From Fimbriosthenelais zetlandica (Eukaryota): DNA of 64,000 bases. The stretch is taken from the NCBI GenBank assembly GCA_977030845.1, contig OZ365115.1, positions 11,284,001 through 11,348,000 on the forward strand, read 5' to 3'. Under the pieces are notes generated by a model that saw only the letters and a program-made list of their open reading frames with translations, made no database searches and had not been told where the DNA came from. Both the position numbers and the translations under genes were made by a program. Positions 55,668 through 64,000 of this stretch are shown here, piece by piece (position 1 is the stretch's first letter; every line of letters begins with the position of its first letter).

Positions 55668-55673
55668 TTTATT
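55668..55673 (-). terminator. Candidate polyadenylation signal (AATAAA) of the ANL-like gene
   Basis: TTTATT on plus, about 450 nt downstream of the stop codon. Hexamer match only. Confidence 0.3.
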
Positions 55674-56125: not shown

Positions 56126-58191
56126 TCAGAATTTGTCTTGGTTAATGAACCGTCTTAGGAACCTCTTCACCTTTGACTTCTTTTTCTCACCTCCTGTAGG
56201 ACTGGAAGTGTTCACTGCCTCTAAACTTCCAGCAGATAAATCTTGCACGGTTCCTATATCCCCTCCCCCACCAACCTCATGTCCCGCAAGATCGTGAACA
56301 CTGCGCGAAATCTCCGGCCGAAACTCACTGAGGTTAGATGTAAAAGGATTCCTAGAATCACTCCCGGCTTGCATTGAATCATTAGACTCATCTGATGCGG
56401 CCTGGGGCTTTTTGTCGATCACTAAATCAGGTGTTGACTTGAAGTGCCTCAACCCTCGTTTGTTTATACTAGGCGTGAACCTTGGCTCATGTTTTGGCAT
56501 CAGATTGAGGTTTTTAGTTGAGACATAATGACCGTAATTGTTGGTTGTGTAATGGGTGGGTGAGACTTCTAACCTAGGTCCCATCTTGGTGGGTGTCATA
56601 ATGCGATCAACCATTTTAACATTGCGTCTTGTGTTATAAAGTGGGTGGGCTAACCCTCGTGGACCATCCTGTACATCCATCGGTTTCTTTTCGGGAGTTT
56701 TCCTGACAACCAGAGCTCCCGTGATTGGATCCCGCACTAATTTAACCTGAGGTGGCCTCTGTCGCTTGCCGATTTCCGTCCTTAAGTGATTCTCAAATCT
56801 CCCAGTAGGTGTCATCGCTATCGGCCTTCCATGATGTCTCGGTGGTTCTGGTGTTTCCTCTGGAAGATAATCCTCAGTTTGTTCCTCTAATAATAACGAT
56901 GAGTGTTCGTCGTATATCTCAGACAGTGTGTAGACCTCTGTCTCTTCCACGGGGTTCCTGGTTTGGTCGATTTTAGTGATTTCATCCAGCATTATTGGGG
57001 TTGATATATCAATGTCTTTTACGACAACTTCCGAATCGGGAACGGGGGTGGAGGTCCGTAAGGGAGGCTGGTAGTTGTTGACCAGATCTGTGAGGAGTTC
57101 GTGTACTCCTGGGTTGGTCACTCTGATATGGTCCATTTTATCTTTCACATAGTAACTCTCATTCTCATCCATTTGATGTGCTTTAGGTAAAACTATGCTC
57201 AGCTCCTGGTCTATGCTATTAACAGACTCACCGAGACCATTGTCTGAGTTCTTTATGACGTCTGCTTTGATATGTTGTACTTGGTCATACCTCGTCTGTT
57301 CCTCTGAATTTCTGTGTTCGATATTATGATTTCCATTTTGATAGGGAAGGACAATTTCTCTCGTTTCTTGGACTTCTTCATGGGTCCAAGTCTCTTCCCA
57401 CTGCTCCTCCTTTTCCTCCTCCCCATCTTCCACTCCTTCCTCTAGCCCTTCTTCCTTCTGTTCATTTTCTACTTTGTTTATGTACTTATCTTCCACCTCT
57501 TCTTGAACCTCTTCTAGTGATCTTTCCTCATCCACAACCACTTTTTGCTCCTCTTCTTCCAGCTCTTCTTCTGCCTCTTCCTCCAACACCTCTAATTCTC
57601 TTTGCACCTCTTCCTCAATCTCTTCCTCCATCTCTTCTTCCTTTTCATCCTCCTCTATGATATCCATCAGTTGTATATCTGTATTATTATTACCATCCCC
57701 CAGCACTTTACCATAACCATATCCATCTACCTCATCATAACTGTTTATCACATCATATTCCTCCACTTCATCCCGATCCCTTGTGGTTATAAACCCATCC
57801 AGTCCTTCAACAAATGTTATAATCGGTGCATCTAGTTCGGGAGTCGTGGTATCAAGGGCGGAAAAATGAAGAAAATCAACCCCAAAATCTTCAAAGTCTT
57901 CCTCCTTGAATATGCCCTCCTGCCATTGCAGTGCTTCTGTTGACGTGTCTTCAGCTGTTTCTGGGGTGGGTTCAGACTCTTCAACAGCTTGTTTCCTCGC
58001 GTAGATTTCACCATCAGATTCATCGAGGTTACTGAAACTCTCACCAAGGTCATCCTCACCAAGGTCATCGAGGAAGGACTGGGCAGCGTCGGCACGCAGC
58101 TCATGACGTAGAAGTTCACCATAAGGTGATCTGGGTAAGGAACAGAGGAAGAGGACGCCTCCTCTCAACTTCTTATCCAGCGTTACCTGAT
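56126..58191 (-). CDS. Terminal exon: end of the ANL C-terminal subdomain plus ~650-aa Glu/Asp-rich low-complexity extension
   Basis: ORF track 56126..58210. Acceptor ttgcag at 58192 joins the phase-1 end of exon 58361 ([14 protein letters not shown]). 688 codons are open to the stop. Confidence 0.88.
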
Positions 58192-61100
58192 CTGCAACCA
58201 TCAATTTCATTTCTCAGATTTATCACTTGATGGATCTTTGATTATTGTTCCAATTATGTCTCGCCTTGGAGTTTCTTAATACTATCTTAATTCTAAATCC
58301 TTAAATGTAACTTATTACTATAGTTTAATGAATGACGCATGCATCAAATGGTGTTCCTACCTGCCACATGATCGTAGATGTCCCCCTCTGTGATGGTAGC
58401 TTTAGGTTTCCTCACAACATAGGCTCTGGGTACATGGCCGAGGTTTCGGTATGGGACACCGACCACTGCAACATCCTCAACATCTGAGTGTTGCCGAATG
58501 ATTTTCTCCAGTTCCACTGGTGAGAGCTACAAAATGTGAGGTTTAGATCATTCTATGACTCACCAGGTTATGCATAATAAACAGGATTAATAAGACTCAT
58601 ATGTCTTAGTTTTAAGCAGGCATTGGTGCTTGGAATTACATGTACTAACTTTCTTATACTTACAAAGTTCTGATCGCTTTCAATGAGATCTTCCATCTTT
58701 CCAAAAGGAGTTACTAACTCTGATGTGTCTATACACCCAAGATTTCCTGAAGAAAACATAGGCAACAATGTCACAATTGGCGAAAACTAACAGGAAATCA
58801 GTCAGCAATGGGTACCTTACAATGTGCACTAGACTACCATGACCATGGCTGCCCAGTGGAAGAGCACAAGTACCAAAGGCATAATGCATGTTCCCCTGGC
58901 AAGGAACTTAAACATTAAAGATGTATAAGTTCTAAGCTATAATTGATTAAAGTATGTCGAGTACTCACCAGTGTGTAGCCAGCCCTCGTCGTCAATGCCT
59001 GTGTCTTCTGTGTCATCTTTTGTCAAGTAACCCAGCATAACTTGTGGTCCTTTCACACAGATCTCACCATAGGTGTCCGGTTCAACGACACCCCCGAAAA
59101 TGATGTCCATAAACTGGAAAAGATTCAGTCAAGTCTCTTATTCCATAATATTCAATTCACCACAATTTATTCCATATTTCCACGATGAAAATAGTATGAG
59201 AAGAATATTTGTAATCTTTTTTAAAGTCTACAAGTTAATGTCTTCCCCACTTTTTGCAGGGCTTAGCGATAGCCCAACGCACCCCAGCCCAAAAGCCACA
59301 GCGCACATCCAAAATTGAGATCTTGGATCTTCCCTAGTAGCATCAGTAAAAGTACCCACCTTGATTTGTGTGTTGGGGCAGACTTTGCCAGCATATCCCG
59401 GTAAAGTCTCGCCTTTAGTGACGACACACACAGCGCAGGCCTCGTCAATGGCGAAACCCTCTCTAAACTCAGTGACACCTGTCCTCACCATGATTTCACC
59501 TATCACGCCTTCCCTCACAGCTGTGCCGGTGTTGTAGATGCGGCACAGACAGCTCAGATCAGTGGTGTGAACTTCAGGAGCAGAGCTCAGGTACTCTGCC
59601 ATGTGGGTGTTAGTGTGAGCAATCGTCACCTACAAAAATATTTTAGAAAAAATAAAATGGAAGGGAACTTATGCCAATAATAACGTTTGTAACCTCAATA
59701 ATGGCATTAATAGTTTTCGGGATGTCAAAATTTAATGTTAAAAGGTGTTGCCTAACAACTTGTAGGCTACACCTTATATTTCAAAAATAATTCAGGACTA
59801 ATTCCGTTTGGATATCAAAACTGAATCTACAACCTATCCCTGTGGAATTTTGCTTTCCGTAGTTAGCCTTAGGCATAATTATACATGTGCATGATAATAA
59901 ATGTATAGCCTATAAAATAAATCTGCATAATATTAGTTGACATACCTTGTGCGTGGACATTGCCTGTAGGATATTGCTGTATGTAGGCTGGATGATCATA
60001 GTGGCGCCCTCTTTGATCGCAACTCCGCAATAAAATACAAGACCAATCATAGACCACATGGGATGACAACACATAGTGACGTCATTCAACATGACAGGTG
60101 ACAGGTTCCGACAGCTGAAACATACCATCAGTCTTTAAGTAATGGAATCATACGCTCACCTAAACAAGAATTAACTTCAACTTAATGTTGATGTTACTGA
60201 TGTTTGGTCTTACCCCGACTCAGTTTTTTCACTGATTTGGGAAGATCAGTGCAACCAATATTTTAGCCGATAAATAAGTAATACACTCAGAGAATAGAAA
60301 AACCTTTAAGGACAACCCTGAAAAGAAATGTCAATATTTTGAATGATTTGATGAGGGGTTTTAGTGTACTAACCTGAGGATCGCCACGTTAGAGTTGAAG
60401 CTGTGATGGGAATGCATGACGCCCTTGGGTTCACCTTTAATGTCATTGACAAACGTCACGATGCTGACGTCATCAGTGGTGTTTATTTTGGAGTCACTGG
60501 GCACAGAGCGTCCGTCATCTGTCAACATCTCTGCTATTGTCACATGACCACGTAAATGGTTCCCTAGTACAAAAATCTCCTGGAAAAAACAGATAAGCTT
60601 TTTTAAAATTTTATTTTCTACAACCCCAGTGTGATAACTGGGTTATCAAAGGTCAGTCATGCCCCCCACGGGCATGTAAAAAGCCATACATATCTGCCGC
60701 TGTCTATGTCTTTTGTTCATGTCATAATAATGTTAAAATCACGTACAAATGTATTATGATGGACATACCTTTACGCGCCCAATTCTGGAGGCTGCAAACT
60801 TGGCGTCATCCATTTTATCTCTGTCAGCAATGATGTAATCCGGGCAGAGCACTTGAAACTGATGGAAGAGGTCGTCTGAGGGATAAAAACAGTGAGTGAG
60901 AGCGAGAAAAAAAGAGCAAGAAAGAGCAGATTAGGTTGTTTAAACAAATCTTTATCAGAAAGCCTTTATCAGAAAGAATATAAGCCTACATCTTTATATT
61001 CTGATTCATTTGTTTTCAATGTATTTTAAAAGATTATACTAATGACTAGGCCTAATTATTTTTAACAAATTAAACAAATAATCGTCTTCAAACCTGTGTT

Positions 61101-61346: not shown

Positions 61347-61420
61347 CTGTAAAAATAAATCAACAAAAATGTATAATTATACGTGAGAGACAAGGCATAG
61401 CCTATAGAGTCCACACTCAC

Positions 61421-61440
61421 CAATACTACCACTGTACTGA
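61421..61440 (-). CDS. Probable 20-nt microexon of the ANL-like gene (I-STVVVL)
   Basis: Minus strand: gtttgttttgggtttgtag|tcagtacagtggtagtattg|gtgagt. Phase 1 to 0, which links the upstream ATG exon exactly to exon 61346. Confidence 0.5.
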
Positions 61441-62381
61441 CTACAAACCCAAAACAAACCTATTATAATATAATAGGCGGGCAACCGGGGTTCCCCTTGT
61501 CTCCAAATGAGGTTTTCTGTCCTGTGATTGGACGCTGTATGGTGCTATATGTGTGTGCCAAGGAGGTGTCCCCCTTATAGGCCATCCAGAATTGGTATTG
61601 GATCACAACGACCAAGGCCCATTGATATTATGGACTATTGCTTTGTGTGCTCATGTATTTTCGATCCACCATTGGCTACAGTGGTTTCATCCTTAATTGG
61701 ACTCATCAGGTATAATTATTTCGTTTCCCCGACAGGGGGACGAAATACTGTTCTTGTGTGTCCGTTATAATTGTTGTAGTGAAGTTTTTCTGAAAATCGA
61801 CTTTCTAATAGAGGTAGGAATCTGGTTTCTAGTCACCAGGTAGGGCATGTTAAGAAGTGTTCATAATGTGTGAAATTGACATCATGTGACATCGGGTGAC
61901 ATCACAATGGTGTCATGAATTTTAAAAATGGCAAAATGTAATGGCAGTTTTTTTCAGGTATCTGCCAACCAAAAATCATGGCACTGGTACTAAGTTACAT
62001 GTCTATGATGCTCTATCATTTGATCCCATCATTTGACCTGTGCCCTAATTATTTTTCGTTAATTAGCTAATTAGCATGAAATCATATCAAGCCTGCCTCC
62101 TCCTTAACCGCTCCATAAAGGTGAATCATTAGGCGGCTATCCATTGATTAGAGGCTTCTTGTTAGCATGAAATACTCAATTTTGTAATTGACTATTTTGT
62201 TCCCCACGATAATGACATTTCAAAATGAGGTCATGACATATTTTTGAAAAAAATGATTCAATCTTGAAAAATCATGTACACACGTGCAGAATGGTCAGAT
62301 CTACCTAAATCGAAAATTTGGTGGCAATCCATCAATTATTAAGGGAGTTAGCTAATTTTAAAAAGAATGGGTAAAAGCTAA

Positions 62382-62465
62382 GCCAGAGGCAGGATTTGAA
62401 CCCATGCTGAAGAAAGTACCATTGGACTGACAGACCAGCAATCTACCTAACTGAGCTATCTTGGC
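62382..62465 (-). pseudogene. tRNA-like element (pseudo-tRNA or tRNA-derived SINE head)
   Basis: GCCAAGATAGCTCAGTTAGGTAGA...GGTTCAAATCCTGCCTCTGGC: A box, B box and a partial acceptor stem, but a mispaired anticodon arm. Confidence 0.6.
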
Positions 62466-62589
62466 TAATGCGTATAGACATGGTTTTTAACTGGGTGACA
62501 CTTGATCTGTGGTGGATGGGAGCTATTTAGCACATGAATAACTCATGAAATAAACAGCCCACTATCTAATTAGCATATTCTAGGGTAAG

Positions 62590-63290
62590 GGTAAATTATT
62601 AAAGGCTACCCTATTATAGGCCAGTGTCTTATAGGCTGACCTATTGTAGGATTGCTGGCATGTCAAACCAAAGGTATTTCTACAGTGTGGGTTCAAATCC
62701 TAGCCTATTATAAGATATTCATTTATAGGCTGGCCTATTGAGGCTAGCAATTACTAGGTCAGCCTATTGTTGTATGCTAGCCTATTTATAGTGCCAGGGT
62801 CAATAGCTAAGCCTATTTTAGGTTAAGAGATAATAGGCAAGCCTATCATAGGCTACCCTTTTATAGGCCAGCCTATTGTTATATGCCAGGGTCAATAGCT
62901 TAGCCTATTTTAGGGTAGGAGAGAATAGGTTGGCTTATTGTAGGCTAGTCTGTTAGAGGCTGGCCTATTGATATATGCTAGCCTATTTATAGTCTCAGCA
63001 TAAATAGCTTAGCCTATTTTAGGGTAAGGGTTAACAGCCTAATATAGGCTGGCTTTTTATAGGCTAGCCTATGGTCATGTGCCCTTGCCTATATTCCAGC
63101 CTATGCATAGTGCCAGGGTCAACAGGCTGAGCTGAGCATCTGAATGATGCATGAGCCTAGTACAGGCTGGCTTTTCATAGGCTAGCTTATGGTCATGTAT
63201 CCTAGCCTATATTCTAGCCTAGATATTGCTTTACCCTAGCCTATATGCTTAGTGCCAGGGTCAATAGACTAAAATATTTAATGGCTTTTG
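62590..63290. repeat. Degenerate satellite of ATAGGCTAGCCTAT-type quasi-palindromes
   Basis: Repeated TAGGCT/AGCCTA motifs. GCCAGGGTCAAYAG recurs at about 62793, 62885, 63113, 63255; an outlier lies near 63685-63720. Confidence 0.8.
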
Positions 63291-63318
63291 GTAGACCTGT
63301 GAGACACAGAGAACTCAC

Positions 63319-63371
63319 TACAGCTTTTCACCATGGTGTTTGAGAGGACCAGCGTCTTTACTAAGTCACCT
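63319..63371 (-). CDS. Probable start-codon exon of the ANL-like gene (ATG at 63334, MVKSC)
   Basis: ctgtttgctttgtag|...aacaccATGGTGAAAAGCTGTA|gtgagt. Strong ACC-ATG-G context and a phase-1 end compatible with the 20-nt exon. The frame is also open upstream of the ATG, so a further 5' coding exon is possible. Confidence 0.45.
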
Positions 63372-64000
63372 CTACAAAGCAAACAGCGAAAGAAATTGAT
63401 TTAATGGTGAATATACAATCAACATATTAAATAATATTTTATTCATACATCGAGAAGACATATAGCAGGAAATTGAAAGCACATTAATAAAAGAGTTCTT
63501 GTGTTCCCAATCTATATTATATGAGGCACCCTCCTTTGTCACTTTAGGTTACTATTAGATCGAGATAGTGGTGTAGAAATCATCCACCAGGTGCAGAAGC
63601 GGAAATCCCAACCAACTTCTTGAATGCTGAAGATCACTAACTACTCTCATCAGAAAGTATCAATAGAAAGTGTCAATAGCTTCTATAGGCAAGCCTATTG
63701 TTATATACTAGCCTATTTGTAGATTCACACATATCAGGCATGACTATCCCATGTTCCTCTAGTTTCCCTGCCCCCTTATCATGAACACAAGGGAAACGAA
63801 ATATCACTTATTGCTAGTTTGGTAGGTGTACTCGAGACCAGGGATTATATTCTTGGCCTCTCAGTGGTCCCCCATATATGTAATCGATTTGTATATATAT
63901 ATGGGTAGCACCTGGTTATAAATCTACATATACAGCTAGATTGTTTCTAGTAGTAGTATATTGATATTAGAAGTATAGAGTGGTTCGATAACTTGTAACC

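What the first reader, a model, noticed from the sequence alone, without database searches (positions are those of the whole stretch)
56126..58090. About 650-aa acidic, disordered tail fused in-exon to the ANL fold
Seen: the exon that finishes the ANL domain runs on without a stop for ~650 more codons. These include a Glu-rich probable coiled-coil ([38 protein letters not shown]), further acidic segments, then a switch to a basic/Pro-rich distal third. Known: 4CL/luciferase-like proteins normally end a few residues after the K529 motif. Inference: the dead domain has gained a large polyampholyte region, possibly for cation binding, condensate formation or cytoskeletal/ciliary scaffolding.
Basis: partly seen in the sequence, partly recalled or inferred. 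Interest (0 to 1): 0.7.

Follow-up and report, generated by a model that had tools for sequence, protein, structure and literature searches.

The report
Conserved disordered tail on dead ANL enzyme
The last exon of a luciferase/4CL-like gene that lacks its catalytic lysine really does run on for 655 more codons, and a second, distantly related species keeps the same tail under purifying selection, so it is a real, mostly disordered extension with no detectable relatives and an untested function.

Summary
Observation confirmed. On the minus strand, one exon (58191..56126) supplies the last 33 residues of an ANL C-terminal subdomain. The luciferase K529-equivalent lysine is Glu here. The exon then continues for 655 codons to a TGA. 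This is the longest stop-free run in the window by far (695 codons against 207).

One relative was found among 1.84 billion representative proteins. It lies on genomic contigs from two sequencing runs of one other species. It has the same intron position and phase, the same Lys-to-Glu change and the same C-terminus.

The tail has three parts:
- Block A is acidic and aromatic, 70% identical, with dN/dS about 0.09.
- An acidic spacer varies in length (203 against 139 aa) and contains 12-nt repeats.
- Block B is neutral to basic and Pro-rich, 57% identical. It has conserved S/T-P sites, a predicted hairpin and a basic amphipathic C-terminal helix.

AlphaFold2 gives mean pLDDT 39, with only local helices. 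The tail as a whole is a polyanion (net charge -87), not a polyampholyte.

No Pfam, PDB or Atlas match explains the tail. The function, probably a scaffold or adaptor, is inferred. I rate it a new variant of a known kind, of moderate interest.

The parts
58362..58526 (-). Penultimate coding exon. It encodes the first two thirds of the ANL C-terminal subdomain. One more exon base (58361) starts the split Asp codon. The upstream exon boundary was not fixed.
   Evidence: Pfam AMP-binding_C positions 1-52 of 76, E 9.6e-11, above the curated cutoff. It aligns to luciferase 6abh residues 448-501.
58192..58360 (-). Last intron, 169 nt, GT..AG, phase 1.
   Evidence: Read directly. The orthologous contig L001 has an acceptor at the same codon position and phase.
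56126..58191 (-). Terminal coding exon: 688 codons plus TGA (56128-56126).
58094..58191 (-). End of the ANL fold (residues 1-33). The Glu codon at 58117-58115 stands where luciferase has its A10 lysine.
   Evidence: Aligned to 6abh 504-538, to CG6178 (7kyd) and to firefly luciferase: their G-K aligns with G-E here. The orthologue also has G-E.
57764..58093 (-). Block A (residues 34-143): conserved acidic and aromatic segment.
   Evidence: 70% identity to L001, dN 0.18, dS 2.1, dN/dS 0.087. pLDDT is about 30-55.
58040..58069 (-). Perfect 15-nt tandem duplication encoding DDLGE twice (residues 42-51).
   Evidence: TRF: period 15, 2.0 copies, 100% match.
57155..57763 (-). Variable acidic spacer (residues 144-346): 36% Asp+Glu, net charge -59.
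   Evidence: 37% identity over the aligned part. Length is 203 aa here and 139 aa in L001. The frame stays open in both species, and none of 20000 shuffles did so. AlphaFold2 predicts helices at 176-217 and 226-249.
57550..57654 (-). 12-nt and 24-nt tandem repeats that encode the (Glu-Glu-Glu-x)n run.
   Evidence: TRF rows. The alignment has a gap here in L001.
56129..57154 (-). Block B (residues 347-688): conserved, neutral to basic, Pro-rich segment.
   Evidence: 57% identity. dN/dS is 0.107 for residues 355-450; dS is saturated elsewhere. It holds 10 S/T-P sites against 4.8 expected, P = 0.008, and 5 of them are conserved.
56699..56746 (-). Predicted beta-hairpin (residues 483-498).
   Evidence: AlphaFold2 strands at 483-487 and 494-498. 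Ten-residue block means of pLDDT here are 64, 82 and 56 in the block-B model. Nearly invariant in L001.
56129..56176 (-). C-terminal basic amphipathic helix (residues 673-688).
   Evidence: 13 of 16 residues are identical in L001. It has the highest helical hydrophobic moment in the tail (0.61-0.67) and net charge +5. AlphaFold2 predicts a helix at 674-682 with low confidence.
55668..55673 (-). First AATAAA after the stop, 453 nt downstream: a candidate polyadenylation signal.
   Evidence: Pattern scan. Not verified with RNA.

Best explanation
Shown: the terminal exon of a luciferase/4CL-like ANL gene encodes the last 33 residues of the ANL C-terminal subdomain, with Glu in place of the A10 catalytic Lys. 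In the same reading frame and the same exon it then encodes a 655-residue extension. A second species, diverged past synonymous saturation, keeps this extension under purifying selection. The extension has three parts: a conserved acidic and aromatic block A; a poly-acidic spacer that keeps its composition but not its sequence or length and grows by 12-nt repeat slippage; and a conserved neutral to basic, Pro-rich block B. Block B carries conserved S/T-P sites, a short hairpin and a basic amphipathic C-terminal helix. The chain is predicted to be mostly disordered with small islands of structure. Inferred: the protein no longer works as an adenylating enzyme. It acts as a scaffold or adaptor, with the dead ANL body as a binding or sensing module. 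Blocks A and B would be docking segments that fold on binding. The acidic spacer would be a flexible, highly charged linker. The C-terminal helix would be a membrane- or calmodulin-type anchor. From general knowledge, many relatives end in an SKL-type peroxisomal signal; this protein ends in DKF (EKF in the other species), so it is probably not peroxisomal. The confidence given applies to the shown core (a real, conserved, coding extension on the ANL polypeptide); I put the scaffold mechanism alone at about 0.3.
For: The ORF and splice junction were read directly. The junction is seamless: the penultimate exon aligns to 6abh 448-501 and the terminal exon to 504-538. Upstream exons give colinear AMP-binding matches, and AMP-binding_C scores E 9.6e-11. 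The ORF far exceeds chance. The single relative, P0001, scores E 3e-109. Its genomic contigs L001 and L002 carry a 629-codon stop-free frame there, about 621 codons within the exon. They show the same acceptor position and phase, the same G-E at the ANL end and the same C-terminus. dN/dS is 0.087 for block A and 0.107 for residues 355-450; dS is saturated elsewhere. The spacer keeps an open frame and 33-36% Asp+Glu in both species. Disorder: mean pLDDT is 39 for the exon product and 47 for block B, with local elements only, and every block lies on the disordered side of the charge-hydropathy plot. C-terminal helix. There is no Pfam, PDB or Atlas explanation of the tail.
Against: No RNA or protein evidence exists. 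An internal splice or an alternative terminal exon in the main isoform therefore cannot be excluded. Only one other species supports conservation. Its contig does not reach the upstream ANL exons, so linkage there rests on the 32 ANL-end residues and the shared acceptor. The AlphaFold2 alignments had only 2 sequences, so low pLDDT is weak evidence of disorder. Every functional statement is inference from composition and motifs.
Confidence: 0.75

Rival explanations
1. The tail and the ANL body are mainly made as separate products. This could happen through an alternative splice or polyadenylation site just after the ANL end, or through an internal promoter and start codon for the tail. The fusion would then be a minor isoform.
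For: No RNA data could be obtained. Earlier scan notes, unchecked, report other large disordered exons in this genome, one with an unconfirmed splice join.
Against: The link from the ANL end into block A is itself strongly conserved and stays in frame in both species. No ATG is conserved at the start of the tail; P0001's 'M' is a gene caller's non-ATG start at a Leu codon. The only strong internal AG|GTRAG donor is at codon 667 in the window, and the orthologue has none.
Confidence: 0.1
2. One reading: the tail is chiefly a bulk physico-chemical device, such as a high-capacity cation (Ca2+) buffer or a condensate driver. Its function would lie in its charge and not in specific motifs.
For: The tail has net charge -87 (-60 in the orthologue). 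The spacer keeps 33-36% Asp+Glu in both species despite low sequence identity.
Against: About 450 of the 655 residues lie in blocks conserved at 57-70% identity, with long invariant runs. That points to sequence-specific interactions. Block B is uncharged overall. The 'coiled-coil' has no heptad signal.
Confidence: 0.15
3. The long ORF is an artefact: a chance open frame in a 3'UTR, a decaying pseudogene or an assembly chimera.
For: None beyond the lack of RNA evidence.
Against: The stop-free run is 695 codons against 207 for the next longest, and the longest run in 2000 shuffles was 203. dN/dS is about 0.1. The same junction and frame appear in independent Logan assemblies of another species from two runs.
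Confidence: 0.01

Closest known systems
Beetle luciferases and Drosophila CG6178 long-chain acyl-CoA synthetase (PDB 6abh, 1ba3/1lci, 7kyd); plant 4-coumarate-CoA ligases (5bsm, 3a9u)
   Same: The last two exons align colinearly and without gaps to the C-terminal subdomain: 6abh 448-501 and 504-538. Upstream exons match Pfam AMP-binding in order.
   Different: Those proteins end 5-10 residues after the aligned region, at 541-555 aa; this one adds 655 residues. Their A10 Lys is Glu here. By direct reading, the P-loop region is ...NDIKGEPKG..., not the Ser/Thr/Gly-rich consensus recalled from general knowledge. The C-terminus is DKF, not an SKL-type signal.
Folded proteins with long acidic disordered tails (for example ANP32, HMGB1, nucleoplasmin; recalled from general knowledge, not tested)
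   Same: A folded body is followed by a strongly acidic, low-complexity, length-variable stretch.
   Different: There is no sequence relationship; Pfam, PDB and Atlas found nothing. Here the acidic stretch lies between two conserved, non-repetitive blocks, and the body is an ANL fold.
Multidomain animal ANL proteins (DIP2, AASDH/ACSF4, insect Ebony; recalled from general knowledge)
   Same: They are animal ANL-fold proteins with extra regions beyond the adenylating core.
   Different: Their additions are recognisable folded domains (DMAP1-binding, carrier protein, PQQ-like repeats). This tail matches no Pfam family at E <= 1 and is predicted to be disordered.

Membership tests
ANL superfamily (Pfam AMP-binding PF00501 + AMP-binding_C PF13193) | C-terminal subdomain recognisable by profile | tested here: met
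   PF13193 scores E 9.6e-11 at 42.9 bits against a cutoff of 24.5 on the penultimate exon. The remainder aligns to luciferase 504-538.
ANL superfamily (Pfam AMP-binding PF00501 + AMP-binding_C PF13193) | Large N-terminal domain, colinear with the profile | tested here: inconclusive
   Five upstream exon pieces hit PF00501 in the right order: profile positions 18-80, 162-192, 203-257, 263-355 and 361-384. Each is below the gathering score when scanned alone, at E 2e-4 to 1e-2. The spliced protein could not be submitted by reference.
Active adenylate-forming enzyme (luciferase/4CL/acyl-CoA synthetase) | A10 catalytic lysine (K529 of firefly luciferase) | tested here: not met
   Glu aligns with the Lys of 6abh, 7kyd and 4g37. 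The orthologue also has Glu.
Peroxisomal luciferase/4CL-like proteins | C-terminal PTS1 tripeptide (SKL-like; recalled from general knowledge) | tested here: not met
   The C-terminus is DKF here and EKF in L001.
   Best-phase a/d occupancy is 0.33 against a shuffle mean of 0.39, P = 0.98. This is a crude home-made test; no COILS or Marcoil was available. AlphaFold2 does predict a helix, with ten-residue block means of pLDDT from 58 to 90 across 181-220.
Intrinsically disordered region | Low predicted order and disorder-type composition | tested here: met
   563 of 688 residues have pLDDT below 50, and the block-B model has mean pLDDT 46.9. All blocks fall on the disordered side of the charge-hydropathy boundary, block B only marginally at 0.406 against 0.413. 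The alignments had 2 sequences, so this evidence is weak.
Calmodulin-binding basic amphipathic helix (1-5-8-14 class; recalled from general knowledge) | Hydrophobic anchors at positions 1, 5, 8 and 14 with net positive charge | not testable with these tools
   V675, L679, F682 and F688 fit the spacing. Net charge is +5 and the hydrophobic moment is 0.61. The pattern is conserved in L001. It was matched by eye only, and binding was not tested.

The most novel reading that the evidence does not exclude
A lineage-restricted dead ANL fold has been turned into a ligand-gated scaffold. The strongly conserved acidic and aromatic block A begins right after the A10 position. It would dock back into the former ATP/CoA groove as a pseudo-substrate. 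Small-molecule binding, or proline-directed phosphorylation of block B, would release the tail and expose its docking motifs and the C-terminal membrane- or calmodulin-binding helix.
Probability: 0.07. Interest if true: 0.7.

Novelty: new variant of a known kind. Interest (0 to 1): 0.38.

Why it matters
ANL enzymes (luciferases, 4CLs, acyl-CoA synthetases) are among the best-studied enzyme folds. I found no description of a non-catalytic member with a large appended region, although three full-text searches are thin evidence of absence.

Here the dead catalytic residue and a 655-residue tail were both already present before two species diverged past synonymous saturation. The first tail block is at least as conserved as the end of the fold itself. 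This suggests the selected function has moved from chemistry to interaction. It gives a concrete case for asking what a retired adenylating fold is kept for.

The practical weight is limited. Disordered extensions are common in animal proteins. Unchecked scan notes report many other giant disordered exons in this genome. No function has been shown.

Tried and rejected
- **More relatives of the tail.**
  - phmmer against 1.84 billion representatives gave only P0001.
  - The word-indexed searches with residues 300-688 and with a block-B profile gave only P0001.
  - The penultimate ANL exon as query found no candidates.
  - Two metagenome scans, with the A1 and A2 alignments as queries, found nothing.
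  - The cluster look-up showed a single unnamed member.
- **Known domains in the tail.** Pfam found none at E <= 1. In the PDB profile search only the ANL end matched. The ESM Atlas gave only sub-0.8, disorder-like hits.
- **Fold search.** Not run, because both models are of too low confidence.
- **Internal repeats or paralogues.** There were no off-diagonal self hits and no second ANL copy in the window.
- **Taxon clues.** Rfam and tRNA scans gave only one tRNA-Trp.
- **Literature.** Three full-text searches found no paper on this architecture.
- **Motifs tried by eye and dropped.** Matches to FFAT, clathrin-box, FxDxF, LIR, PxIxIT, SH3 and 14-3-3 motifs were tried on the conserved segments and dropped as unconvincing.

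Full report
**1. What is in the sequence**

The minus strand carries an ORF at 58210..56126, 694 aa counted from the first ATG. The DNA shows that the real unit is an exon.
- The previous exon ends ...DIYDHVA plus one base (G at 58361) and is followed by a GT donor at 58360-58359.
- A pyrimidine-rich tract ends in the acceptor AG at 58193-58192.
- The terminal exon therefore runs 58191..56126 in phase 1 and gives 688 codons plus TGA.

The splice join restores a continuous ANL C-terminal subdomain.
- The penultimate exon aligns to residues 448-501 of the red-emitting luciferase 6abh.
- Residues 3-37 of the terminal exon align to 6abh 504-538.
- Pfam calls AMP-binding_C on the penultimate exon (E 9.6e-11).
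- Five upstream exon pieces hit AMP-binding in colinear order. Each is below threshold when scanned alone.

In the alignments to 6abh, Drosophila CG6178 (7kyd) and firefly luciferase, the G-K of the A10 motif stands opposite G-E here, so the catalytic lysine is replaced. The solved relatives are 541-555 residues long and end 5-10 residues after the aligned stretch. This protein goes on for 655 more residues.

**2. More than chance**

- The 695-codon stop-free run compares with 207 for the next longest in all six frames of the 64-kb window.
- Across 2000 shuffles of the exon the longest run was 203.
- The other two frames of the exon hold 41 and 66 stops.
- There is no second ANL copy in the window.

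**3. Anatomy of the tail**

The tail is strongly acidic to about residue 450, with net charge down to -19 per 50. Residues 451-600 are net basic, with 5-7 Pro per 50. The quoted Glu-rich string sits at residues 180-217.

The whole tail has net charge -87, so it is a polyanion and not a polyampholyte. Only the distal block is charge-balanced, with a fraction of charged residues of 0.28 and a net charge per residue of 0.00.

**4. A second species has the same architecture**

A filter-only phmmer search of 1.84 billion representative proteins returned one hit, P0001 (490 aa, E 3.4e-109). Word-indexed searches with residues 300-688 and with a block-B profile returned the same single protein.

P0001 is a prokaryote-style gene call on Logan contigs of about 4.1 kb from runs ERR14368249 and ERR14368248. 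The two contigs differ at 1 of 4091 positions.

On contig L001 the stop-free frame extends upstream of P0001's start, to 629 codons. About 621 of these fall within the exon. It begins after an acceptor (ttttacag) at the same codon position and phase as in the window. The DNA upstream looks like intron, so the contig is genomic. The exon opens with the ANL end, again with G-E in place of G-K. It finishes with the same C-terminus (...RRFI-Q-KF, then stop).

This rules out an assembly chimera. It also shows that the Lys-to-Glu change and the tail both predate the split of the two species.

**5. Selection**

I threaded codons onto the protein alignment and applied the Nei-Gojobori method.

| Segment | Residues | Identity | dN/dS |
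|---|---|---|---|
| ANL end | 1-33 | 62% | dS saturated |
| Block A | 34-143 | 70% | 0.087 (dN 0.18, dS 2.1) |
| Start of block B | 355-450 | 63% | 0.107 |
| Whole block B (as computed) | 355-688 | 57% | dS saturated |

Synonymous sites are saturated in most segments, so the species are anciently diverged.

The middle part (residues 144-346) is only 37% identical where it can be aligned. It is 203 aa here and 139 aa in the other species. Both species still keep the frame open there, which none of 20000 shuffles did. Both keep 33-36% Asp+Glu. So the spacer's composition is selected, not its sequence.

Tandem Repeats Finder finds 12-nt and 24-nt repeats at 57550-57654. These encode the (Glu-Glu-Glu-x)n run, and the alignment has a gap exactly there in the orthologue.

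A perfect 15-nt duplication at 58040-58069 encodes DDLGE twice.

**6. Structure**

AlphaFold2 on the exon product, with a 2-sequence alignment, gives mean pLDDT 39 and pTM 0.20. 563 of 688 residues score below 50. Confident elements are few:
- a helix through the Glu-rich run (176-217, with ten-residue block means of pLDDT from 58 to 90 across 181-220) and a second helix at 226-249;
- a helix pair at 345-373;
- a short C-terminal helix.

Block B modelled alone gives mean pLDDT 46.9. Block means are 74-80 for the helix pair and 64, 82 and 56 across the hairpin.

All blocks fall on the disordered side of the charge-hydropathy boundary, block B only marginally.

A simple heptad test of residues 176-249 gives a best-phase a/d hydrophobic occupancy of 0.33, against a shuffle mean of 0.39 (P = 0.98). 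With net charge near -19 per 50 residues, a classical coiled coil is unlikely. This test is crude.

I ran no fold search, because the models are too uncertain to give meaningful matches.

**7. Conserved features of possible functional meaning**

These are read from the alignments.
- Block A holds a nearly invariant stretch of about 50 residues, rich in Phe, Asp and Glu.
- Block B holds several invariant runs, for example [45 protein letters not shown] and [11 protein letters not shown].
- Block B has ten S/T-P sites against 4.8 expected (P = 0.008), and five are conserved.
- The last 16 residues have net charge +5 and the highest helical hydrophobic moment in the tail, 0.61-0.67.

Hydrophobic residues at 675, 679, 682 and 688 fit the 1-5-8-14 spacing that I recall for calmodulin-binding helices. 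That is a lead from memory, not a test. The C-terminus (DKF or EKF) is not an SKL-type peroxisomal signal.

**8. What it is not**

- The tail matches no Pfam family at E <= 1.
- In the PDB profile search only the ANL end matched.
- The ESM Atlas returned only low-scoring, disorder-like neighbours.
- There are no internal repeats at the protein level.
- No relatives turned up in two metagenome scans.
- Three literature searches found no description of a dead ANL protein with such a tail.

**9. Interpretation**

The core claim is well supported: this is a real, coding, conserved C-terminal extension in the same exon and frame as the end of a catalytically disabled ANL fold.

The mechanism is inferred. 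I read the protein as a non-enzymatic scaffold or adaptor. Blocks A and B would be docking segments that fold on binding. The acidic spacer would be a flexible charged linker. The C-terminal helix would be a membrane or calmodulin anchor. Proline-directed phosphorylation is a likely control.

The main open risk is isoform structure. Without RNA data I cannot show that the ANL body and the tail sit on one mRNA in the main isoform. The conserved in-frame link, the absence of a conserved start codon for the tail, and the lack of a shared internal splice donor argue for a single polypeptide.

**10. Context from earlier scan notes (unchecked)**

- A first-reader note on the same gene calls it a maintained ANL pseudoenzyme (s1-184606). 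My checks of the last two exons agree with that.
- Other notes call the genome annelid-like and report several other giant disordered exons. If that is right, extensions of this kind are a recurring theme in this genome, which lowers the surprise.

**Verdict.** This is a new variant of a known kind, of moderate interest.

Noticed in passing
window 34676-34749 (-): A single tRNA-Trp (CCA) gene. It was the only Rfam or ARAGORN hit in the 64-kb window.
   Followed up: no
window 58040-58069 (-): A perfect 15-nt tandem duplication inside conserved block A that doubles the peptide DDLGE. The orthologue has a related but not duplicated sequence.
   Followed up: partly
window 58571-58786 (-): By eye, the exon piece between the GWLHTGE exon and the AMP-binding_C exon appears to carry the hinge and A8 region with its Arg and Lys positions changed (...[16 protein letters not shown]...). 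The P-loop exon reads ...NDIKGEPKG... This agrees with a broadly disabled active site. It was not aligned formally.
   Followed up: no
L001 / L002 (Logan contigs from ERR14368249 / ERR14368248): The protein collection holds the orthologue only as a truncated prokaryote-style gene call, which starts at a Leu codon read as Met. The true exon frame extends about 130 codons further upstream.
   Followed up: yes
window 61400-64000 (-): The first coding exon or exons of the ANL gene, before Pfam AMP-binding position 18, were not located. The gene may start near or beyond the window end.
   Followed up: no
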